Source: Lama guanicoe
Lineage: Eukaryota
DNA: 64,000 nt
Direction: 5' to 3'
Assembly: GCA_013239625.1 (NCBI GenBank)
Contig: MU054526.1
Coordinates: 2,656,345 to 2,720,344, forward strand
Position numbers and translations under genes: made by a program. The notes beneath the pieces are model-generated. The model made no database searches, was not told where the DNA came from, and saw only the letters and a list, made by a program, of their open reading frames with translations. Each line of letters opens with the position of its first letter. Position 1 is the first letter of the stretch. Of the stretch, positions 5,041-62,637 are shown one piece after another.

Positions 5041-5160
5041 GGAGGGGGAGGTAATTAGGTTTGTTTATTTAGTTATTATTATTTTTTAATGGAGGTACTG
5101 GGGGTTGAACCTAGGACCTCATGCATGCTAAGCATGTGCCACTTGAGCTATATCCTCCCC
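5041..5160 (-). mobile_element. Vic-1-like tRNA-derived SINE (camelid)
   Basis: Reverse complement reads ggggaggatatagctcaagtgg..cttagcatgcatgaggtcctaggttcaacccccagtacctcc + A-rich spacer + cctaattacctccccc. Confidence 0.85.
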
Positions 5161-17364: not shown

Positions 17365-19720
<2,356 letters not shown>

Positions 19721-34814: not shown

Positions 34815-37333
34815 ATGTCCCTCCATCCCACCGGCCTCCTGGGCCTCGGTGAGTCCTGGAGCGGAGGGGCAGGATTCCGGGGAGAAAGGGATCTGCCTCC
34901 CAGCTCAGTGCTGACTCCAGCCCAGGAGATGCCAGGACCCTCGGGGAGCAGGTGGAGCCCCCAGGTCTGTCCCTTAGCTCTGGCCAAGACGGAAGTCTGA
35001 CCACGGAAGGTTCAGTCCTAGAAATGGGTACCTGGGTGTGGGGTTGAGTTTTCAGACTGCGAGGGGCTGGGAGAGGGGGGAAGACGCCTGCTTGAAAGCG
35101 GGGTTTGGGGGGTTACGTTGAAGCTGTCTCAGAGGGAGGAGAAGGCTTGTACTCAGGTGTAATGTGAGGGAGGGGGGCTGGAAGTTATGGGAAGGTGGCC
35201 CCCGTTTCCTCCCCGAGCCCTCTGTGACTGCAGCCCCAGGAGGAACCCGGGCGGAGGGTGTTTTTCTCATTGGACCTTCCCTTCCAGTGCTCTGTCTGGG
35301 CCAGATGATCTGCGCACAGGAGGGTGAGTCTTCTCCCCGACCACCCCCCTACCCCGCACCCAGGACAGATCCAGATGGTAGACGGGAGTGTGTGCTGATC
35401 CTGGGGAGGGGGCTGGGGACCCTGACCTAGACCCTGAATTGCACATAACCCTCCCCCAGGCCCCTCCCCCATTCTCCACCTCCGCGCCCTATGGTCCCAC
35501 GGAGACAGTTCCGGTCCCTCAGGACCAGGCTGAGCCCACGAGCTGTCCCCACACAAGCCCGGACCCCCCTCGGCAGCCCCTGGGCCGAGGACACGACCTC
35601 GCCAGGGCAGAACCTGAGACTCGTCCTTAACCCCGTCTTCTCCATCCTCCCGGACACAACACAGCCCCGGGGATGCGGTGTGAAATGATCGTTTTAAAGT
35701 TTTGCTTACATTTTACCCCATGTATACTTTTTACTTTCATTTTCCTGAGAGTCCCCTCACAGCTGATCTGCAGGCAGACTGAGACCCAGGCCTCTCTCTT
35801 TGCTCTGCGTCTGTCTGTCCCCACGAGCTCAGGCCCACTTCTCTCTCACATCTCGGTTTTCTTTCACTTTGTAAATGCCGTCTGCCCACTCAGCTCCGGG
35901 CCTCCTCACAGGCCGACTTCTCCACCTTGAGTGCCCGCTTGTCCCCCAGCCCTCAGCTCGGCTGATTCGCACCCGACCTCTGACCTCCCAGAGGCGGGCA
36001 GCCCTGCCTCCCGCCGGCCCCGCGATGCCCACGCTCGCCTGAGGGCACGTTGCACGCTTGTACCCGTGGACTCACACACTTTCAGCCCCAGGACGGCGGG
36101 GACCCGGGGGTGTTTCTCGTATCTGAAGCCAGCGGCGCAGGGAGGCACCTGCACGTGGATGGACGGGAACTGAGACGTGGCTGGAGGAGACGACGAGTGA
36201 ATGAAGGAGGGAGTGGGCGAGTGAGCGGCCCTCCAGCTCCCTGCCCCTACCGGGGGTTTTGCTGACTGCGAGGCCAAGTTCCTGTTTCAGGGCTTCAGAC
36301 CCTCTCTCCCCCCACCGCCTCCAGCCTGGTTGAGACAGATGGCGTTTCCAGAGCCTCAGTCACAGGAAACGGAAACAAGCTGAGACGAGGGTAGAAAATA
36401 CAGAGAGAGCCCAGGGATGGCTGCTGGCTGCCCTGAGGACTCGCTCTGGAGACGGGGCTCCTCGCCTGCTGGGGTCTGCGCTCCGCTCCTCCTCACCCAC
36501 TGCCCGCACTTCAGCTGTGGCTTTGCAGCCTGAGCCCCACACCCCTCACGGTGCCCCCCACCCCGGGACTGGCAGCTGCCCTCCAAACCCAGCCCGGGTC
36601 ATTCCTGCCGCCCAGCCTCCCGCTTCCTTGTCCCAGGAACAACCCTGTCATTCCTGTCCTGTGCGGCCCTCCCTGCCCTCGCTGTCCCCCTAGAGTGGCT
36701 GTGGGCTGGGAGGGAGCCGCCCCCTGGGCAGACATGCCTGGGACCCAGCCTGCTCTCAACCCTCCCATGTCACCCTGAGCAAGATGTGACCAAGACTCGG
36801 TCGTTAAGTCAAGTGCGGGAAGTAACTCTGCAGTGATGGGAATTCATGTGCTCATAGAATGGGCAAGGGGGGGGGTCTTTTGTGGAGGATGATGGAAATG
36901 TTATAGAATTGGGTTGTGGTGATGGTGGTTGCACAGCTTTGCAAGGTTCCTTAAAAAAAAAAAAGGTGACCTGACCCAGTAAAACAGGTGAATTGTGTGA
37001 TGTGATCATTTCCATGTCTCGGCCCTCCTAGGGATGCTGCCCAGACCCTCCATCTCAGCTGAGCCAGACTCTGTGATCCCCAGGGGCCGGCCTGTGACCA
37101 TCGTGTGCCAGGGCCCTGCTGGGGTTGCGACATTTCGCTTGGAGAATGAGGAGGATACAAATGACTTCAAGGATATGCGTGCCAGCTCTCCACTTGGTCC
37201 CCACCAGACAGAGGCCAGATTCCGCATCCTGGCTGTGAGTGAAGGCACTGGCACGCACTACCGCTGCCGCTACATAAAAGAGCATGTCTGGTCTGAGCTC
37301 ATGGTGGTGAGTCCCTGGAGCTGGTGGTGACAG
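34815..37333 (+). pseudogene. LAIR-like (LAIR1/LAIR2 family) Ig receptor gene, frameshifted at the end of the Ig exon
   Basis: Exons 34815-34848, 35288-35323 and 37032-37333 give MSLHPTGLLGLVLCLGQMICAQEGMLPRPSISAEPDSVIPRGRPVTIVCQGPAGVATFRLE...EARFRILAVSEGTGTHYRCRY..WSE, close to LAIR1. Extra TGGTG at 37302-37306 leads to TGA at 37328-37330. Confidence 0.8.
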
Positions 37334-40385: not shown

Positions 40386-40530
40386 CCCCCACCTCTAGGA
40401 TCACACAGTGGAGAACTGTGTCTGCACAGGTGTGGCCAGTGTGGTCTTGCTGATCCTGGAGGCGATTCTGGCAGAAGCTGGGCACAGCAAGTGCAGGTCC
40501 CGGCACGGACCGCAGGGATGGAGACAGGAG
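40386..40530 (+). pseudogene. LILRA-type (activating) transmembrane exon remnant
   Basis: DHTVENCVCTGVASVVLLILEAILAEAGHS from 40399 resembles LILRA DYTVENLIRMGVAGLVL...EAQHS. In-frame TAG at 40396-40398; Arg replaced by Cys. Confidence 0.75.
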
Positions 40531-44224: not shown

Positions 44225-44456
44225 GTGGGGGGAAGGTACAGCTCAGTGCTAGAGTGTGTGCTTAGCATGCACGAGGTCCTGGGCTCAATCTCCAGCATCT
44301 CCATTCAAAAGAATAAGTAAAAAACTAAATAAACCTAATTACCTTCCCCCTTCAAAAAATAAATAAAATAAAAATAAATAAATCTATTAAAAATGGTTTA
44401 AAAAGTAAGCATGCAAACTAACAAAAAATAAAGCTGAAAAGAAAAAAATTTAAAAA
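44225..44456 (+). mobile_element. Vic-1-like SINE with long A-rich tail and 15-bp TSD
   Basis: tRNA-like head; gaaaattaatacgtg (44210-44224) vs gaaaattgatatgtg (44457-44471). Confidence 0.9.
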
Positions 44457-52213: not shown

Positions 52214-53549
52214 ATGGCGTGTGCAGCAGCGAGCCTCATGCGCTCTGACGCTCACACGCTGGGCGTGGGACGGTCAGCCTAGACTAGAAGGTCCCGTCTC
52301 CTGTGGGGTCCAGTGCAGTTAAGGAATGGTTTTGAATCAAGCCTAGAATGTATTCTACTCTGAGACAACTTTCCTTTCTGTGCCACTTGACTGACAGTCT
52401 GAAGACAGGAGCGAGGACACCACGCAGACAGGGGAGAAAGCCAGAGACCGGGACGGCTCGGAGCGCCCCAGCTGCAGGGAAAGATGTCCACACAGAGAGG
52501 CTTCCGCAAGCTGGCATTCTGGGGTTCCCCGTGGCACAGTAAACTGGGGCTGACGCTGTTCCACTCAAGGTCCTGAGCCCCACATGTGGGAACCACAGGG
52601 GCATCCTTGAGGGGGGCACTGTCCAGGTGATTTTCAGACCCACAGCGCTGCCAGCCAGAGCTGCCAGGAAATCAGCAGGTCACCCAGAGACATGTGAACA
52701 GTGGCCAACTTCATGGGCCGGAAAGCCTAGATTCAGGGGGTTCAATGCGGCTTCTGCTACCTTGACTCCGGCCCACCTGAAAGCCTCCAGGGTCTGAAGA
52801 CAGCTAACTTCACATCCGCGTCAGTCCCCGCTTCCTCGCTCCCTGCCCATCCTGAGCTTCAGCTCTGAGGTTAGAAGGTCCTCTCACCCTTTTAAGGAGG
52901 TCAGCGCTGAACAGTGGTTAGTCACCTCCTACATCAGGCCACCAGTCCCGATCACTTCAGGCCACACCTATTAGAAGTGCTGGGACTCTGGCTGCACGTG
53001 GAGCCTGGACGTACTTCTCACGTCAGCTGTCTAACAGAGGAACCCACGGCCGGCGTGTGACGTCCGCTGCCCGAGGGAGGAGGCGTAAGAAACGGCCCTC
53101 GCTGCTCCTGTACCTTTCTGCACCTGCTCGGGGACCGCAGAGCTCAGAGGAGAGGGGCCTGGAGTGGAGGTGGCTGTGGTACAGGAGGAGACACGCAAGA
53201 ATGCTCTGGAAGGCCAAAGAAAGACGGGCAACAACCAAAGGGCCTCCGGCCCTAGATGTCAACTGGTTCCATCAGCTCTTAAGGAAACTTCCAGAAATCC
53301 TGGCCTCGGAGAAAGAATTTATTCCTACTGTGTTTTCTGCCTGTTACGTGCTTTCAGATTCTCATTTCGTAGTGTCATGGGCTCTCCAAATTGCACATAT
53401 CTTTACAATTCTTGCGTTTACACAAAATTAACACTGTTCTCTACGGGTTAGCAAATCAAGGGAGTTGCCGCCGCCCCCCACCCCGCCAGGAGGGGTGGGA
53501 TGTTATGACTCAGAATGGACCGGAGCCAGCCTGCCTGGTTTTGCTGTCA

Positions 53550-54850
53550 CTGAGCTTTGGCAGTGCAGGGGCCTGCCCTCACACGCATGGCGGTTGTCCT
53601 GCTCCGCCAGGGACGCTGAGAGGAGGGCAGCGCGGGAAGGCGGGCCGAGCCAGCTCTCCGGAGGCCGTGACCCCGGGAGAACGGGCGTGCGCGGACCTCG
53701 GGGAGCCGCGCAGACACGGGTGCGGGGGGAGGCGGACCGGGAAGCCCGAGAGACTCCAGGGCGAGGGTCGCTCAGCAGGAAAGAGAGCGGCTAAGAAGCT
53801 GCTATGAAAGCCACTTACGGGAACCCACCGCTTCCATAGGCACGAGCGAGTCCCCACCTGCGCTCGAACAGCGACAGCGACAACAGAGAGCAACCCTGCG
53901 GAATGAACGCAGCGAGCAACGTGCAACACCCAGCCCCCGCGAGCGCACGTCTCTCAGACGTTTCCGAAGGCTGCGAAACGCAGGCGGGAGCGACTCGAGG
54001 CCTGCCGTCCGCGGGCGGCGCTGGGGCTCAGCATCGTGAGCGCGGCAGCCCTCCCGAGGCGGCGCTGCGGGCGCACGTCCGTCCCCAGAGTCCACCCACA
54101 GCTCTTCGCCTGGAACTGGACGAGTTGGCACGAGCTCCCCGCGGAGAAGTAAGACGTGAGCCTAGCTAGGGAGACGGCGCAAGAGCAGAGCCGTGCGGGC
54201 GGCGGGGACCAGCGCGCCCCGGGCCCTCGGAGGCCCGGGGAGACGGAGCCCGCGCGCGGCGGGAGAAGCGCGAGGACCGGCCGCGCTTCGCAGGCGGCTC
54301 CAGGCGGTGCGCGTCACGGACCCTGTGACTCACCTGCGACCGCGCGCTCCCGGCAGCGGGGAGGCGGCGGCGGCCACCGCGCAGGCTCAGCAGCTGCTGG
54401 AATTGCTCAGCGGAAGTGTCACGAGGAACATGCTACGCGCACGCGCTCCCAGTTCTGCCCACAAACCGATGCCGAGTTACGAAGGGCAAGTAACAGCTTC
54501 ACGGTGCAGAACCCCGGGCCCGCCGAGTCAGCCCAGTCCGGAGCCCAGGTCCCCAGCGAGGAGGAACAGGGACGGTGTGGCTGGAGGGGCGTCCGCCCCA
54601 GATAGCTGGGAAGCGGTTTGGGCAAACCTTCCCTCCTGGTGCGTCCTGCTCTCTGTCTCCCCGGAGTCCCCCCCTCATCCCCCCGGGCCCCGCTCTCATC
54701 ACCAGCGTGACCAAGGCTGTAAGGAAGGCGCCCAGGGGCTCCGTTCCTGCGCTCGTAACTGTCATTAATCCAAACAGGCTTCCGTGACCCAGGAGGGTCA
54801 GCAAACCGCTGACGTGTGGGAGAGGCGCTGAGCTTGCAGTAGGTAACCTC
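53550..54850. promoter_or_regulatory. CpG island / bidirectional promoter-like element not assignable to any recognised gene
   Basis: High CpG density; ETS CGGAAGTG 54411-54418; NRF1-like GCGCACGCGC 54437-54446; minus-strand donor at 54334/54333 and plus-strand donor TAG|gtaacc at 54842/54843. Confidence 0.65.
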
Positions 54851-55344
54851 TTTTTCGTGTTGTTAGCTTACTTTACCTGCAGCTCTTCTAATATAAACTG
54901 ACTATAAATGCTGATGCTGACAAACAGTAGGCAGACTCGTTGGCAGGTGTCAGAACACCGCGCCTTCCCGTCCATCCCCACGGACTTCTCACCAAGTGCC
55001 AGAAGCTGGACCACAAAGTAAACTGTGAATCTTCTGGCCGTCCAGCTCTAAACCCGGCATCGGGCTCTCTTCACTTGTTGGCACATTTGGACAACGTGTG
55101 GAGCACAGAAGCGGGGTTCATGACAGGCAGAAACTGTTTTCTGGAAAAGCAGAAATTGCCCTTCGTAACTCGGCATCGGTTTGTGGGCAGAACTGGGAGC
55201 GCGTGCGCGTAGCATGTTCCTCATGACACTTCCGCTGAGCAATTCCAGCAGCTGCTGAGCCTGCGCGGTGGCCGCCGCCGCCTCCCCGCTGCCAGGAGCG
55301 CCCGTTCGCAGGTGAGTCACAGGATCTGTGACACGCACTGCCTG
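54301..55344. repeat. 189-bp inverted repeat (54301-54489 / 55156-55344), 666-bp spacer
   Basis: Manual alignment: 8 mismatches, no indels. The same peptide appears in ORFs 54193(+) and 55338(-). Confidence 0.97.
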
Positions 55345-55616
55345 ATGACAAGCTAACCAATAATGGATATTAGTCTTCTCAGCGGCATGTTATCAATTTA
55401 TTAATATATAGTTAAAATAAGCAATAATCAACTAAGCAGTTACAGCTTATTAAAATGTAATTTTCATTATGCAGTGTGCATTTATTGTGTTCTATGAGCT
55501 GGAATGCAGTCTAAGAAGTGCTGATGACTTGACAGCGAGAAGATGTGGCTTATAATTTCATGGGCCCTTTTATTTGCTTCACTATTTGTTTATTCTACCG
55601 AATCTTGATGACAAAT

Positions 55617-56438
55617 TGTGAAAAATACTCCCTTCCCTATCAGGGACAATTATTTGTTTGGACATTGAATACGCAGGTAGCATAAACCTGGTCTGAAATG
55701 CAGAACAAGCCACTTCCTTGAAGGTCCTGCATACAAGGTGGGAAGACTCTGCTGGGGTCTGCAGGTGAGGCTTTGGGGAGGTGGGTGCTCAGGAGAGGGT
55801 CAAGGCTGAGACAGGAGTGGCGACTCACCACCACACCTGAAACAGAGGAGAAATTCCTTATGAGAGAATTGGGGATGAGGCGTTCCCCTCAACACAGCCA
55901 TTTATCCAGGGAGGAGAGAGAGCCATAAACTGTGTACATTTCTGCAGAGAACGATACTGCTTTTGTGAAACAGCTTCTGAGTTGTTACTGGCGATGAGGA
56001 AAAATAATGAATTTCTCTATAGCAGGACAGTCAAACTAAGTCAAAATCAAAACACGTATAACATGCCCCAAACACGTCCCCGTACAGACCTCCTCAGGGC
56101 AGCGAGAGGTAATCAACCTCTGGGGAAAATGGTCCCTTTCTTCTGACACCAGCATTGTAAGTTTTAAGATTACTATTTCTTTCTCCTCCTGCACAGGGCA
56201 TCACAGGGACCTAAAGGCTCACCCTGTAAATGCATCAATGTCTCTCATACATTTTAGGTAGAACGTTAACCTGTCAATAAGATACATGATTCTTTGTATC
56301 AAAAATGTGTCAAACTGCATCCCATGGCACAGTTCTCAGAACTTCTGAGAGTCTGTCTCCCCGGTTACAATCCCAAGTTTGCCTCGAATAAAATTCTATT
56401 TGTTTCTTCTTAGCTTGATAACTGAATTTTCGTTGACA
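55617..56438 (+). mobile_element. Probable ERV LTR
   Basis: TG...CA ends and AATAAA at 56387-56392 near the 3' end; no TSD found and left boundary uncertain. Confidence 0.45.
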
Positions 56439-56614
56439 CGGGCTCCAGTGCAGACTGAATGCTTGGCCACAGCAGCCAAGTCTGTACATGGCATGAGATG
56501 CCCGTCATGGCCCAGGAGCCGGCTGCCCACCGAGCCTGACACAGGTCTCCCCAGCAGCACCCCGTCTTCAGATGGAAGTGGTTTACATGGGATGTGGTCA
56601 CCAAGTTCCTGAAG

Positions 56615-57105
56615 GCAAGCAGTAAGCAGAATAATGACCCCGTAAAGACGTGCACATCCAGTCCTCGGACTCTGAGAACGTGTCACCTCGCATGGCAAAG
56701 GGACTTTGCAGATGTGAGTAAGCTGAGGCTCTGGAGATGGGGAGACGCCCTAGTTTATCCAGGAGGTATCTTGTGTTACCACCTTATAAGACAAAGAGGG
56801 AGTCAGAGGAGTCAGAGCCAAAGAGCATGTACGTTGAAAGCAGTGGTTAGAGAGATGTGCTCTGAAGACGGAGGTTGGGGGGAGAAGCCATGGGACACGG
56901 CAGCCTGTGGAAGTTTGAAAGGCAAGGGAACGGATTCCTCCCCGAAGCCCTCAGGAGGAACACAGCCTGAAGGCAAGTCGGTTTTAATCCAGGGGTTTCC
57001 AGCTTGGACTTCTGCCCTCCAGAACTGCAAGGTAGTAACTTTGCGTGGCTTTACCCCACCGGCCGGCGGTACCGGTGCAACAGAAACAGGAAACAATAAA
57101 GACAG
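56615..57105 (+). mobile_element. MLT1 (MaLR) LTR
   Basis: cagaataatgacccc...catggcaaagggactttgcagatgtg...ctggagatggggag...ctccagaactg. Confidence 0.75.
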
Positions 57106-57495
57106 ATTTTTTTTTCCCCTAATCTGATCTCTCAAGCGCAGGGTTTGAATCTCTTACGTCCAGGGATGTCCCTCCAGGCACACGGCAAACATCCAGTATG
57201 TATGTGTTGATGCCTGGATGTAAAAGGGCTTCAGGCCAGGAAGTCAGCAGCTGATGGGTCAAGCCAGGCCTCAGATGTGGTCAGAACATGTGCAGAGGCC
57301 TGCTGCCCGCCCCAGCCCTGAGGAGAGGAGGGCTTGTCTCCCGGGGAGGGGCTGGTTCCCTTCCCGTGGGGCTGCTGACGTGACAGCCCCTTGACGGGAA
57401 AACCAGCCTCCCCGCGGACACACCCTGTGGGTCTCCGTGCTGAGGGCACCGTGTTTCCTCCATCTGCACAGCCTGCACCACAGGGAGGAGGCGCC

Positions 57496-60400
57496 ATGAC
57501 CCCCACGCTCACGGCCCTGCTCTGTCTCGGTGAGATTGAGGAGGGGAGGGCGGTCCTGGTCGGGGAGGGACCCTCCCACAGCCAGGCCTGCTCTGTCAGG
57601 AGACCCCACGGCTCAGGACGGTCGGGGGAGGGGCGGTTCTGCTCAGGGTTCAGGGCGACTCTCTCACAGGGACCTCTCTTCCAGGGCTGAGTGTGGGCAT
57701 GAGGGCCCAGGTGCAGGCAGGTGAGTCTGTGCCCAGATGTCCCCGCTCCCCCCTCCTCATTGTGGGGAAGGGCCAGCCCCTCCCCTGGCAACGGGGGTGG
57801 GGAACAGCAGCTCTGGGCTGAAGGACGGGGAGGCTGGGGGCTGTGGGGCTGAGAGCTGGGGGATGGGGGAAGGGGAATGTCTTGTGACCCAGGCCTCTGA
57901 TTTCCTTCCAGGGACCCTCCCCAAACCCACCATCTGGGCTGAGCCAGGCTCTGTGATCCCCTGGTGGAGGCCCGTGACAATCTGGTGTCAGGGGACCCTG
58001 GGGGCCCGGGGGTTCCGTCTGGATAAAGAGGGAAGCCAACGCCCCTGGGACACACAGCCCCCACTGGAGCCCGGGCACAAGGCCAAGTTCTCCATCCCAC
58101 ACATGAAAGAGAACAACACAGGGAGATACCGCTGTTACTATCACAGCCGCACTGGCTGGTCAGAGCGCAGTGACCCCCTAGTGCTGCGGATGTCAGGTGA
58201 GGAGCCAGCGGGTCAGTCAGGGACCCAGAAACTGCACAGGCCCTGCTGGGGGAGCCCCAGGGGTGATGCTGGATCAGGGGGTGGGGTCCCCAGGGAGGGA
58301 GAGGCAGGGAGAGACACGGTATGGGCAGGAGATGAGGGTCCTCCGACAGGCGCTGAGTCTCAGCTCAGAACCAGGTGGGCCGGCAGCCCCTCACACCCCC
58401 TTCTCTCTCTAGGATGGCTGCGTGACACCCCCTCCCTCTCGGTGCAGCCGGGCCCCACGGTGGCCTCAGGACCGAGTGTGACCCTGCTGTGTCAGTCAAG
58501 GCTCTACAGAGACACCTTCCTTCTGTTCAAGGAGGGGGCAGCCCATCCCCTACTGCTTCTTAAATCAAAGTCCCAAGGTGGGCAGTACCGGGCCGAATTC
58601 TCCCTGAGTCCTGTGACCGCAGCCCACTGGGGGACCTACAGGTGCTACAGCTCACTCAGCAGTGACCCCTACCTGCTGTCACAGCCCAGTAACCCCCTGA
58701 AGCTCCCGGTCTCAGGTGAGGGGCCCCAGCCTTGTCCTCTCTGTGTGCCGATGGTCAGCTCTGAAGGAGACCCCCTTTCGAGGATGGGAGTGAGGGGGGC
58801 TCCAAAGGAGGGTCAACCCAGGAGGGATTCGCCCTTCAGAGGGACGGAGGGAAACAGGGCCTTCCCACCCTGCCCTTCCCACGTCCCTGTCACCAGGCCT
58901 CAGGTGGGAGGAGGGAGGAAGCTGGGGTGGCCCCAGGGCAGGTACAGCAGAAGAGTGTGAGCAGAGATGGGGTCCCTGGGGAAGCTCCAGCCCCTCACTC
59001 AAGGACAGGCCTTTTACCCAGGATCCTCTGGGAACCCCCAGCCCCACCCAAGGGCCCAACTGCACACGGGAGAGTCCCTGGGGCCTCTGCCCAGTGAGTG
59101 GACACCTCGCTCCAGGCCTGTCTCTCGAGGTCCTCACTGATCTGACTCCTGCTCTCAGTCTCAGCACAGCTTGTGTCCCCGGGGGTATGGGGCTGGGAGC
59201 CGGGCAGAGATGCGGGGGGACCACAGGGCTCCGGGGGCTCTCAGGCCGTGTGGATGAAGGGTGGGGGTCATGGAGAGGGAGATGTTGGGTCCAGCCTGGG
59301 AGAGAAGTAGCCCCCGGCCCTCACCCCTGTCCTGACCCCCACGAGGCCCTGAGAACCGGCTCCTCCCTCCCATGAAGTCAGGCCCATAGACACGTAAGTG
59401 AGGGTCTCCGTGGGAGGTGGTGGTGGGTACTTGGGGGGCAGGGCTGAGTGATGCCCTCAGTTCAGGCACCTCTGGAGACGCGGACTTGGAGACCCCCTTC
59501 CCCTGCCTGGGCCTCAGTTTCCCCATGTGTAAAAGATGAGAACTGGCTCAGAGCTTATATTTCCTTCAGTTCTCACTTCTGGCTGTGACCCCCCGGGAGG
59601 GGCGGCCTCACAGGGAGGCCCCAGGATGTGACCTAACGGGTCTGTCCCCTCTGCAGCGGTGACGCTGACACTGTACTGGGGAGAGGGAAGGGGCAGGACA
59701 GTGGTCTGGGGCGTCCAGCCCTTTCCCTTCAGCTCAGGGAGCTCAGCCCGAGGGGAAGGGGCACGGGCTGGAGTCAGACCCCGGGTCGAGTCCCAGCTCT
59801 GCTGCTCCTGCCGTGCGACCCGGGCAGGTGGCTTCTGCATCTCGGGTTCATGGTCTGTGGGCTCCCTGGTCCCACCGTGCTCACAGGCTGCTGTGACATG
59901 AGGTGAAAGACGGCCTGGGCTTCCCAATGCTGCAGCGGGGAGGGGCGGGTAACAAGGAAGGACCCTCAGCTCCCGAAGAGACTCTCCAGGCCCCCCCACT
60001 GATGAGGAGCCCCCAGAAATGAAGCTGGTGTCCACCTGGGGGACAGCACAAGGGGGGTTCATGGAGCCCCAGTCTTGGGATCAAGCCAGTGCTGCCACAC
60101 CAAGGCTGGGTGGCCCATGTCTTGTGACTCTCCTCTCTGTGCCTCAGTTTCCTCATCTGCACAGGGGTGGGGTGGGGGTGATGGTGACGGGGGATGGGGA
60201 GGGGTTGCATGATTGTTCTGAGGGTTAGAGATGATTGTGTGGACTATAGCACACGTCTGGGACACAGTACGTGCTGAATTAAATGGCACTGTTGGCTCAT
60301 TCATGATGTCCCCCAGGAGGTGCCCCAGGTCTCGGGTGGCATGTGAACGTTCCGATCACAGGCTCAGTGGCCTTCGTTGTCATCGTCCTCCTCCTCTTCC

Positions 60401-62637
60401 TCCTCATCCGCTATCTGTGTCAGGAAAGACGCAGGAAGTCAGGTGAGTAGGGAACGGGGGGACCCTGGCCACTGGAGGAGGTGGGCTTAGGGCACCAGCC
60501 AAAGGAGAACCAGAGGTGGGCAAGGTCAGCTTAGAAAATTGGTTTTTCCACAGTATGGAGTTTTCTCAAAAACTAAAAATAGAACTACCATATGATACAG
60601 CAATTCCACTGCTGGTATATATCTGAAGAAAAGGAAAACACTAATTTAAAAAGAAGCTTACACTCCAATATTCATATAACCCATAGCCAATGTATGTGAG
60701 CAACCCAAGTGGCCATCAGCAGATCAATGGATAAAGAAGATGTGGTGTCCATGTATTCCATGGAATATTACTCAGCCGTAAAAAAGAATGAACTTCTGCC
60801 ACTTGCAACAACGCGCATGGACCTAGACAATGTTATGCTTAGTGAAATAAGTCAGAGAAAAACAAGCGCTCTATCTTATCACTTATTGTGGAATCTATAA
60901 AATAATACAAATGAATGTTTATGCAGAACAGTAATTGACTCACACGTATAGAAAACTAGTGGCTGCCAGTGGGGAGAGGGAAGGGGGCCAAATTAGGGAT
61001 GTGGGATTAGCAGATGCAAGCTGCTATGTATAAAACAGATAAGCAACAAAGATACACTGTATCAAATAGGGAATTACAGCCATTATTTGGTTTAGATGGA
61101 GTATAAATCTATAAAAATACCGGATCACTATGCTTATACACCTGAAACTAATATAATCCTGTAAATGAGCTATATACTCCATTTAAAAAAATTAGAGTCT
61201 CAGATCTGAAAATCTAGAAAGAAAACACCTAATGTCAGCTCACATGCACAAATGTACGGTGTTTTCATCTTTTTCAATCTCATGAAACACTGAAACACAT
61301 ATGCCCCTTCTGGGTGCAGGCGGGGGCTCCACCCCTGAGAGATCTCAGGGAATGCGAGCAAGCGTCACACCCCCTGTTCTGCCCCAGCAGATGCCGCCGT
61401 GAACGACACACAGCCTGCGGAGGAGGTGCAGCTAGACCATTGGGTGAGACCCCTGCTCCCGTCCAGGCCACCAAAGACTTGCTTGTTGCCAAACTTAGTC
61501 CAACGGACACTCCTCTGTCTTCACATCTCAGCTCCCAGCAGCTCCCACACTGACCTCTCCTGAACTGCCTGGTCATGTTCTGCTCTGACTCCACGCCTCC
61601 ACTTTCCTCGTGACCTCATGGCCCCTCCTTCAGGGTCCCCTTTATTGGCTCCTTGTCCTCTGTCTGACCTTCTGCTGTTGGAGCGTAGCCCCAGGTCTCA
61701 AGAGGATGCATGAATAAGTGAACCTCCCCAGACCCCCTAGGCGCCCCTTCATTCATTCACCCAGCAAAGGTGCACAGGGCGAGCACTAGCCCCCCGGCTC
61801 CCTGGCGGTGCTGCAGGTGCAGCCGTGAGCACACTGTGTCCACACTCCTCGAGCTCACCTGGTGGGTGAGGGAGACTATATGCAAATTAGCAGGCAGTGT
61901 CCTAGAATGCAAGGCCCTGATAGGGAAAGTAAAGCAAGAGAAGGAGACAGAGAGCATGGGAGGAGGGGCAGCAAGTGCAAAGGCAGGGACATGCTTTTGC
62001 AGGAAGATGGGCCATGTGGCTGGAGCCAAATGAGCAAGAGATAACGTGTTAACACAGAAATCAGAACCGTAGAGAGCAGCCAGAGACGCCAAGTTGTCAG
62101 GAAGCCCCTGGAGATTCCGTCAGGAAAGCGACCTGATCTCATCTAAGGTTTTAAAGCATCACTCTGGCAACAGAGTGGAAAACTCACTGGAGGAGATCCC
62201 AGTGGGTCCAGGAGGTGCTGCTCCTGTCTCACTGTCTCCCTCCAGCAGAACAGGCCGGATGGAGGCCCCCGGGGTGGGACGCACCCTCAGGGAGGGACGT
62301 ACGCCCAGGTGAACCACTCAAGATCAAGCCTAGGGTGAGGAATTGCCACCTGTCTTTCTCCCCTGTCGGGGGGACTGCTTGACACAAAGGACAGACAAGC
62401 AGAAGAGGACACGCAGAGGGACAGTCAAGCGGGTCCCATCCTCTCCAGCCCTCTGGCTCCCCCCCCAACCCAACCACACACCTTACCTCTCTCCCCCTAC
62501 TGCAGGCTGCCCCATCTACATGCCCCCAGGATGTGACCCACTCGACTCTCAGATGGGAGACTACTGCAGCCCCTCCCTCCTGGTCGGGGAAGCCCCCGGC
62601 AGAGCCCACCTTGTACACCACGCTCACCATCCACTAG
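57496..62637 (+). pseudogene. Two-Ig LILRB-like (inhibitory-type) receptor gene with disabled stalk and tail exons
   Basis: Leader 57496-57529 and 57685-57720 (MTPTLTALLCLGLSVGMRAQVQA); Ig 57912-58196 and 58413-58715 (both open); stalks 59022-59069 (donor GA) and 59346-59393 (TAG 59387). TM 60329-60442 (uncharged); tail 61391-61443, 62246-62428 (TGA 62336; GC donor) and 62506-62637 (..PTLYTTLTIH*). Confidence 0.85.
60545..61190 (+). mobile_element. LINE-1 3' end in LILR intron
   Basis: aaaactaaaaatagaactaccatatgat.cagcaattccact...MEYYSAVKKNELLPLATT. Confidence 0.9.

What the first reader, a model, noticed from the sequence alone, without database searches (positions are those of the whole stretch)
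54301..57500. Inverted duplication of a promoter + first exon + donor cassette aims a CpG promoter at the LILR gene
Seen: 189-bp arms (54301-54489 and 55156-55344; 181/189 identical). Each holds an NRF1-like site, an ETS CGGAAGTG, a short GC-rich exon-like stretch and GCAG|GTGAGT, with both donors facing outward. Five of the 8 differences are CpG transitions in the right arm, marking it as the derived copy. Its donor (55311/2) is on the + strand 2.2 kb before the LILR ATG (57496), which is preceded by a good acceptor, tttcctccatctgcacag (57471). Inference: promoter capture could give this receptor a new, broadly active 5' exon, and the arms could also form a dsRNA stem or an invertible 666-bp segment. 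Caveat: an LTR AATAAA at 56387 lies in between.
Basis: partly seen in the sequence, partly recalled or inferred. Interest (0 to 1): 0.75.

Follow-up and report, generated by a model that had tools for sequence, protein, structure and literature searches.

The report
Inverted copy of a CpG promoter core
A 189-base piece of a CpG-island promoter has been copied backwards 666 bases away so that it points at a neighbouring immune-receptor (LILR) gene, but nothing yet shows that the copy drives that gene, so it is best read as an ordinary small inverted duplication with an untested regulatory possibility.

Summary
Arms 54301-54489 and 55156-55344 are 181/189 identical in inverted orientation with a 666-nt spacer, and the window holds no other copy. 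Each arm carries the island's only NRF1-like palindrome, its only CGGAAGT site and a perfect CAG|GTGAGT donor. Only 5 such donors occur in the window on both strands.

The left arm sits inside an orphan, apparently non-coding CpG island between a LAIR-like gene and an intact 2-Ig LILRB4-like gene of a llama/alpaca-type genome. The right arm is the secondary copy: all 6 lost CpGs are in it, 5 of them in its outer 51 nt. Its inner 138 nt differ from the left arm at one base, which points to arm-to-arm gene conversion or protection from methylation.

Capture of the LILR gene is untested. The sequence allows a 55311-to-57472 splice, but two poly(A) hexamers and 7 other acceptor-like sites lie between. 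Outward-facing promoters would not make dsRNA, and cruciform extrusion or inversion look unlikely.

The scan's unchecked notes list other short inverted duplications in this genome, none of this sequence. Interest is low to moderate.

The parts
53500..54600 (.). Core of an orphan CpG island (200-nt windows with CpG o/e 0.71-1.19, apart from a dip to 0.57 in the last window, and GC 0.62-0.81). CpG o/e stays at 0.57 or more out to 55345 and then falls to 0.09-0.55.
   Evidence: profile; none of the 5 ORFs from the island and arms matches a Pfam family; no LILR/KIR-like coding remnant between 40.6 and 56.6 kb
54301..54489 (-). Left arm, the resident copy of the core promoter: 24 CpGs, o/e 1.09.
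54328..54336 (-). Perfect donor CAG|GTGAGT of the left arm; last exon base 54334, intron running towards lower coordinates.
54411..54446 (.). Left-arm motif pair: CGGAAGTG at 54411-54418 and the NRF1-like palindrome GCGCACGCGC at 54437-54446.
54490..55155 (.). 666-nt spacer, upstream of both copies. It has no AATAAA or ATTAAA on the + strand, and its CpG o/e is 0.57-0.84.
55156..55344 (+). Right arm, the secondary inverted copy: 18 CpGs, o/e 0.92. Its outer 51 nt (55294-55344) carry 7 of the 8 differences.
55199..55234 (.). Right-arm motif pair: NRF1-like palindrome at 55199-55208 and ETS site (CACTTCCG on +) at 55227-55234, both intact.
55309..55317 (+). Perfect donor CAG|GTGAGT of the right arm; last exon base 55311, pointing at the LILR gene.
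55449..55454 (+). ATTAAA, the first + strand poly(A) hexamer after the donor (137 nt downstream).
55644..55764 (+). Candidate cryptic exon between the donor and the LILR gene: acceptor-like site ending at 55643 (13 of 16 pyrimidines) and an 8/9 donor at 55764. Inference only.
56387..56392 (+). LTR identity not checked.
57454..57471 (+). Acceptor-like site gtttcctccatctgcacag| 25 nt before the ATG (12 of 16 pyrimidines). It is one of 8 such sites between 55345 and 57500.
57496..62634 (+). 2-Ig LILRB4-like receptor gene: ATG 57496, signal exon 1 to 57529, exon 2 at 57685-57720, Ig exons about 57911-58195 and 58430-58726, TM exon 60316-60442, last exon 62503-62634.

Best explanation
This is a real local inverted duplication, millions of years old, of the 189-nt core of an orphan CpG-island promoter. 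The core holds an NRF1-like and an ETS motif, a short non-coding first exon and a consensus 5' splice site. The island lies between a LAIR-like gene and an LILRB4-like gene in the leukocyte receptor complex of a llama/alpaca-type camelid.

The left arm is the resident promoter. It most likely starts a minus-strand non-coding transcript (inferred). The right arm is a fragment of it inserted backwards 666 nt upstream, probably by break repair or template switching with blunt joins (inferred). It sits at the edge of the CpG-retaining domain, and its outer end has been losing CpGs. Its inner 138 nt, which hold the motifs and most of the exon, are kept almost identical to the left arm, by arm-to-arm gene conversion or by protection from methylation.

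The most likely consequence is none, or a weak plus-strand non-coding transcript that ends or splices within the 2.2 kb before the LILR gene. Feeding the LILR gene is possible but not shown.
For: Shown:
- One inverted pair, 181/189 identical, no indels and no extension of homology; no third copy in the window.
- The left arm is continuous with the island, which extends about 800 nt on its donor side. The right arm abuts AT-rich, CpG-poor sequence.
- All 6 CpG losses are in the right arm, none in the left. Of 9 outer CpGs 5 are lost, against 1 of 15 inner (Fisher P=0.015). Seven of the 8 differences fall in the outer 51 nt (P=6e-4). All 3 differences that are not CpG transitions are also there (P=0.02), which favours conversion or constraint over methylation alone.
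- The only GCGCNNGCGC and CGGAAGT sites between 53400 and 55350 are in the arms. Only 5 perfect donors occur in the window on both strands, and 2 of them are the arms.
- The island's ORFs match no Pfam family, and there are no LILR/KIR remnants nearby.

Base rate (unchecked AI notes, a lead only): other 170-460-nt local inverted duplications are noted elsewhere in this genome.
Against: Several features suggest more than a dead relic. The right arm keeps both motifs, 18 CpGs (o/e 0.92) and an untouched donor core: an 18-nt identical block around the donor, with 7 differences beside it in the outer 51 nt. The whole module 53500-55345 keeps raised CpG content, so the right arm may be hypomethylated and bound by factors in the germ line. 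The + strand has no AATAAA or ATTAAA from 53400 to 55448, and the first strong U1 site in that direction is the right arm's donor, which is favourable for productive transcription towards the LILR gene.

Two runs on record as RNA-Seq hold about 0.15 of the sampled words of 53000-58900. Which part they hold is unknown.
Confidence: 0.58

Rival explanations
1. Promoter capture. The right arm is an active CpG-type promoter whose short non-coding exon splices from 55311 to the acceptor at 57471/57472, giving the LILRB4-like receptor an alternative, broadly active 5' exon. This would parallel the distal promoter of human LILRB1.
For: The motif pair and the perfect donor are intact in the right arm. 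It retains 18 CpGs, and the inner 138 nt are nearly unchanged. An acceptor-like site lies 25 nt before the ATG. The receptor gene looks whole. Precedent: human LILRB1 uses a 5' distal promoter in lymphoid cells and a proximal one in myeloid cells (review passage in PMC7944505).
Against: Five of the 9 CpGs at the donor end are lost, which suggests germ-line methylation there. ATTAAA at 55449 and AATAAA at 56387 lie on the way. Seven other acceptor-like sites, three with more pyrimidines, precede 57471, including a candidate cryptic exon at 55644-55764. The isolated 189-nt islet is far shorter than usual island promoters.
Confidence: 0.12
2. U1-site donation. The right arm matters less as a promoter than as a strong 5' splice site placed in the upstream-antisense direction of the left-arm promoter. 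It would turn a unidirectional island into a productively bidirectional one and yield a stable plus-strand non-coding RNA, with or without occasional splicing into the LILR gene.
For: There is no + strand AATAAA or ATTAAA between 53400 and 55448, and the first donor matching at least 8 of 9 positions in that direction is 55311. Principle: antisense transcripts are ended early by nearby poly(A) signals, while U1 sites on the sense side permit elongation (passages of PMC3826338 describing Almada et al. 2013).
Against: Entirely inferential. The start sites are unknown. The donor lies about 800-900 nt from the left-arm motifs, far for a typical upstream antisense RNA (recalled). ATTAAA follows 137 nt after the donor.
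Confidence: 0.2
3. Structural element. The arms act as a hairpin or cruciform, a dsRNA source or an invertible switch for the 666-nt spacer.
For: The arms can pair: RNA duplex energy is -422 kcal/mol for the two + strand arm sequences.
Against: Outward-facing promoters give same-sense exons, not complementary ones, so a hairpin needs a read-through transcript for which there is no evidence. A 666-nt spacer is far beyond what cruciform extrusion tolerates, and the longest perfect identity tracts are 70 and 67 nt, below the lengths usually needed for efficient homologous exchange (both thresholds recalled, not tested).
Confidence: 0.04
4. Artefact or mobile element: a fold-back assembly error, or the terminal inverted repeats of a DNA transposon.
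For: Inverted arms with a short interior resemble both at first sight. The arms begin CAGG, as some hAT-type ends do (recalled).
Against: The arms differ by 8 substitutions with CpG bias and no indel, unlike read errors. Six non-RNA rows from at least two studies hold 0.75-0.79 of the words of the 5.9-kb stretch, though that is not specific to the arms. There is no target-site duplication: the flanks ggcggctc and atgacaag differ. There is no other copy in the window. The left arm is continuous with the island.
Confidence: 0.04

Closest known systems
Distal (lymphoid) promoter and non-coding first exon of human LILRB1
   Same: An LILR gene with a second promoter far upstream of the proximal myeloid one, whose leader changes expression (review passage in PMC7944505; promoter SNPs mentioned in PMC12812672). 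Here too a donor lies upstream and an acceptor-like site lies just before the ATG.
   Different: The human case has transcript evidence; this one has none. The candidate here is a duplicated CpG-island core 2.2 kb upstream. Homology to the human distal exon was not tested, because no human sequence was used. The primary paper (Lamar et al. 2010) is not held; I saw only its title in reference lists.
Small templated or fold-back inverted duplications made at DNA breaks or stalled forks
   Same: A short segment copied in inverted orientation within about 1 kb of its source, with a unique spacer. I saw only the search listing and the start of the abstracts of PMC11724301 and PMC3907307.
   Different: Those papers concern yeast breaks (5-34 bp) or very large human duplications. 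Here the copy is 189 nt, and I found no microhomology at either junction by eye, though the junctions may have mutated since.
Palindromes whose arms are homogenised by gene conversion (e.g. sex-chromosome palindromes; recalled)
   Same: Inverted arms with very high identity over part of their length. Differences cluster at one end (7 of 8 in the outer 51 nt), as expected for a conversion tract.
   Different: The arms are only 189 nt, against kilobases to megabases. Conversion is inferred from the pattern, not shown, and protection from methylation could explain part of it.
U1-PAS control of promoter directionality
   Same: The right arm puts a consensus U1 site, with no earlier poly(A) hexamer, on the upstream-antisense side of a CpG promoter. 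The principle comes from passages of PMC3826338.
   Different: No transcription data here. The principle is statistical across promoters, not a rule for a single locus.

Membership tests
CpG-island promoter with first exon (left arm) | CpG island by composition (200 nt or more, GC > 0.5, o/e > 0.6) | tested here: met
   In 53500-54600 all 200-nt windows but the last (o/e 0.57) have o/e 0.71-1.19 and GC 0.62-0.81.
CpG-island promoter with first exon (left arm) | Housekeeping-type factor motifs close to a 5' splice site | tested here: met
   The only GCGCNNGCGC and CGGAAGT sites of the island lie 77-112 nt from a 9/9 donor. Only 5 such donors occur in the window on both strands.
CpG-island promoter with first exon (left arm) | Mapped transcription start and spliced transcript | not testable with these tools
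No annotated mammalian genome or cDNA collection is on hand.
Alternative distal promoter of an LILR gene (right arm) | Splice junction from the upstream exon to the ATG-bearing exon | not testable with these tools
   No reads were laid. Only site strengths are known: donor 9/9, acceptor 12 of 16 pyrimidines, 7 competing sites.
Alternative distal promoter of an LILR gene (right arm) | Promoter kept free of germ-line methylation (CpGs retained) | tested here: inconclusive
   Inner part: 14 of 15 CpGs retained. Outer part: 4 of 9 retained. Conversion from the left arm could mimic protection.
DNA transposon with terminal inverted repeats | Target-site duplication flanking the arms | tested here: not met
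   The 8-nt flanks differ (ggcggctc against atgacaag) and no shorter direct repeat is seen.
DNA transposon with terminal inverted repeats | Multiple copies in the genome | tested here: inconclusive
No further copy in this 64-kb window.
Palindrome with arm-to-arm gene conversion | Uneven divergence along the arms, not explained by CpG decay alone | tested here: met
   Seven of 8 differences lie in the outer 51 nt (P=6e-4). All 3 differences that are not CpG transitions also lie there (P=0.02).
Palindrome with arm-to-arm gene conversion | Shared derived changes in both arms relative to an outgroup | not testable with these tools
   No other camelid genome could be searched.
Assembly artefact (fold-back chimera) | Arms identical or differing by random errors or indels; absent from independent data | tested here: not met
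   Eight substitutions, 6 at CpGs, 0 indels. Rows from at least two studies hold 0.75-0.79 of the words of the stretch, though not specifically the arms.

The most novel reading that the evidence does not exclude
In llamas and alpacas, a backwards copy of a housekeeping-type CpG promoter core supplies an inhibitory LILRB4-like receptor with a new upstream non-coding exon. It would do so either by firing itself or by giving the neighbouring island's antisense transcription a strong U1 site. The result would be a normally myeloid-restricted receptor with a second, broadly active or germ-line-active promoter, a lineage-specific re-invention of the two-promoter design known for human LILRB1. Selection or gene conversion would then explain why the motifs, exon and donor core are kept intact while the flanks decay.
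Probability: 0.12. Interest if true: 0.55.

Novelty: new member of a known kind. Interest (0 to 1): 0.3.

Why it matters
If the right arm is active, this would be a clean natural example of how a very small DNA-level rearrangement (189 nt) can re-aim a ubiquitous promoter at a tissue-restricted immune receptor. It would also show how a duplicated 5' splice site can alter promoter directionality. If it is inert, as I think more likely, it is still a tidy illustration of three things. A promoter fragment outside its island loses CpGs from the edge inwards. Short inverted repeats can stay homogenised over part of their length. And 'promoter-like' cassettes can arise by neutral duplication. It also locates an orphan, apparently non-coding CpG island in the camelid leukocyte receptor complex. 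The passages I read of the camel LRC paper (PMC6614441; passages only) do not mention that island.

Tried and rejected
The 0.15 shares cannot be assigned to any part of the stretch.

2. Search for the source of the island. blastn of 53400-55800 against the rest of the window found only the arms. Five ORFs of the island and arms have no Pfam match. tblastn with five camelid LILR proteins found only the LAIR-like Ig exon (37031-37321) and a TM-like match (40399-40503) between 20.8 and 56.6 kb. The idea that the island is a relic first exon of a coding gene, or aims at an LILR/KIR pseudogene on the minus strand, therefore found no support. I also considered that it is a far-upstream promoter of CDC42EP5, and could not test that.

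3. Transposon reading: rejected (no target-site duplication, no other copy, arm continuous with the island).

4. Assembly artefact: rejected on the substitution pattern.

5. Microhomology at the two junctions of the right arm: none seen by eye.

6. Rfam: no family in or near the arms. There were only two borderline tRNA-like hits, at 5090-5157 and 44232-44303.

7. Literature. The primary paper on the LILRB1 distal promoter (PMC2858479) is not held, and two other papers yielded only its reference entry. No search of mine addressed whether this camelid duplication is in print, beyond the passages of PMC6614441. Supplementary files were not opened.

8. The LTR identity of the AATAAA at 56387 and the repeat content of 55345-57470 were not determined, because no repeat library is on hand.

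9. Exons were never joined into a spliced model. uORFs and sites were looked at exon by exon only.

Full report
**Observation**

The window holds one inverted repeat in 53000-58500. Its arms are 54301-54489 and 55156-55344, 189 nt each, 96% complementary, with 666 nt between them. Base by base, 181 of 189 positions agree, there are 8 substitutions and no indel. A gapped local alignment of the wider flanks returns exactly the same block, so the duplication is 189 nt and no more.

**Context**

- The window carries LENG8 exons (about 10-15 kb, +) and LENG9 (17365-19188, -); I recognised both from the ORF translations.
- A LAIR-like Ig exon lies at 37031-37321, with a TM-like match at 40399-40503 (compare the scan note s1-861157).
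- A complete 2-Ig LILR gene follows. Its ATG is at 57496, signal exons are 57496-57529 and 57685-57720, Ig exons are about 57911-58195 and 58430-58726, the TM exon is 60316-60442 and the last exon is 62503-62634.
- The first Ig exon of this gene is 98% identical to alpaca 'LILRB4 isoform X1' and 78-83% identical to Camelus LILRs. The genome is therefore of llama/alpaca type, as the scan's own notes also say.
- The passages I read of the camel LRC paper describe a two-Ig inhibitory LILRB4 in the LILR cluster next to LAIR1 (PMC6614441).
- Between 40.6 and 56.6 kb there is no LILR/KIR-like coding remnant.

**What the arms are**

A CpG island occupies about 53500-54600, with o/e 0.71-1.19 (dipping to 0.57 in the last 200-nt window) and GC up to 0.81. 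The left arm lies on its right shoulder. Five ORFs from the island and arms match no Pfam family, so the island looks non-coding.

Between 53400 and 55350 the only GCGCNNGCGC palindromes (54437, 55199) and the only CGGAAGT sites (54411, 55228) are those in the arms. Each arm also ends in CAG|GTGAGT. Across the whole window and both strands there are only 5 such 9/9 donors. Two are the arms. Of the others, 57720 ends LILR signal exon 2 and 60442 ends the TM exon.

The island extends about 800 nt on the donor side of the left arm and only about 100-350 nt on the other side. That is the usual asymmetry around a start site (recalled).

I therefore accept 'core promoter + short non-coding exon + donor' as the best reading of the left arm. 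It would transcribe towards lower coordinates. This reading is inferred from sequence only, and there is no ATG-led ORF of note in the exon-like stretch.

**Which arm is the copy, and what has happened since**

All 6 CpGs that differ are present in the left arm and lost in the right: five by transition and one by transversion. None is lost in the left arm. Together with the left arm's continuity with the island, this makes the right arm the secondary copy. I put that at roughly 85%.

The differences are strikingly uneven:

- Seven of the 8 differences lie in the outer 51 nt, which cover the last 20 nt of the exon, the donor and 33 nt of intron (P=6e-4).
- Five of 9 outer CpGs are lost, against 1 of 15 inner (Fisher P=0.015).
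- All 3 changes that are not CpG transitions are also in the outer part (P=0.02).

Methylation at the edge of the island explains the CpG part. The clustering of the other changes points to gene conversion from the left arm, or to constraint, over the inner 138 nt. Within the outer part, an 18-nt block around the donor is unchanged. That could be chance: about 0.05 for a block chosen beforehand, by my own arithmetic.

CpG o/e remains at 0.57 or more all the way from 53500 to 55345 and then drops to 0.09-0.55. The right arm therefore marks the edge of a roughly 1.9-kb CpG-retaining domain and is not an islet in fully methylated DNA.

Overall K2P distance is 0.044. With conversion in play, this gives only a loose age of millions of years.

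**Does it feed the LILR gene?**

The decisive test was reads. The look-up of sequencing runs listed two RNA-Seq runs and twelve guessed-RNA runs holding 0.14-0.16 of the sampled words of 53000-58900, and six non-RNA holders at 0.75-0.79. I therefore have no junctions, starts or depth, and I kept that stretch out of every later call.

From sequence alone, the picture is mixed.

- In favour: the donor at 55311 is perfect, and the acceptor-like site ending at 57471 is fair (12 of 16 pyrimidines).
- Against: seven other acceptor-like sites lie in between. Three of them have more pyrimidines (55643, 56196, 56413). One of them, with the 8/9 donor at 55764, could define a cryptic 121-nt exon.
- Against: ATTAAA at 55449 and AATAAA at 56387 are on the + strand.
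- In favour: the + strand has no poly(A) hexamer from 53400 to 55448, and its first strong U1 site is the right arm's donor. By the U1-PAS principle (passages of PMC3826338), this favours elongation in the direction of the LILR gene.
- Precedent: human LILRB1 is known to use a distal promoter in lymphoid cells (review passage in PMC7944505).

I put direct capture at about 0.12, a non-coding plus-strand transcript helped by the donated U1 site at about 0.2, and 'no consequence or nearly none' as the remainder of the best explanation.

The two arms can pair strongly as RNA (-422 kcal/mol). But if both copies fire outward, their first exons have the same sense and are not complementary. A hairpin needs a transcript that reads through both arms, for which there is no evidence.

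The longest perfect identity tracts are 70 and 67 nt, and the spacer is 666 nt. By recalled rules of thumb this makes efficient inversion and cruciform extrusion unlikely. The evidence for conversion, however, shows that the arms do interact occasionally.

**Rejected readings**

- Transposon ends: there is no target-site duplication, no other copy, and the arm is continuous with the island.
- Assembly fold-back: the arms differ by CpG-biased substitutions without indels.

**Base rate**

The scan's unchecked notes list several other 170-460-nt local inverted duplications in this genome, one of them with an arm in a CpG island. I take this only as a hint that such events are common and mostly neutral.

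**Verdict**

The thing is a new instance of a known kind: a small local inverted duplication, here of a promoter core. The regulatory possibility is attractive but untested. Interest 0.3.

Noticed in passing
window 57618-57620: The alpaca protein closest to this gene (P0026, 'LILRB4 isoform X1') starts MVGGGAVLL..., which is read from the 3' part of intron 1. Its start codon corresponds here to ACG, not ATG. This window instead has the canonical signal exon MTPTLTALLCLG at 57496. The public alpaca model may therefore be a mis-start, or a CpG variant may create a new ATG.
   Followed up: partly
window 62503-62634 (last LILR exon; P0026 residues 290-333): The tail of this 2-Ig receptor reads ...VTHSTL... 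and ...TLYTTL..., where dromedary paralogues have VTYAQL and SVYATL. The first ITIM tyrosine is gone and the second motif has T at -2 (ITSM-like, recalled), so its inhibitory signalling may be altered.
   Followed up: no
window 53500-54600: An orphan CpG island between the LAIR-like and LILR genes, with no coding potential detected. It is not mentioned in the passages read of the camel LRC paper. It may be the promoter of an unannotated minus-strand lncRNA or a far-upstream exon of a minus-strand gene such as CDC42EP5 (untested).
   Followed up: partly
window 5090-5157 (-) and 44232-44303 (+): Two tRNA-like Rfam hits barely above the gathering score (30.3 against 29 bits). They are probably tRNA-derived SINE heads and not genes.
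   Followed up: no
window 55397-55589 (-): Four AATAAA hexamers on the minus strand within 200 nt, immediately outside the right arm, in a 32-38% GC stretch. This may be a repeat fragment and could explain the abrupt end of the CpG-retaining domain.
   Followed up: no
window 63804 and 63822: Two more GCGCNNGCGC palindromes near the window's end, in a 1-kb bin with CpG o/e 0.67. Not examined.
   Followed up: no
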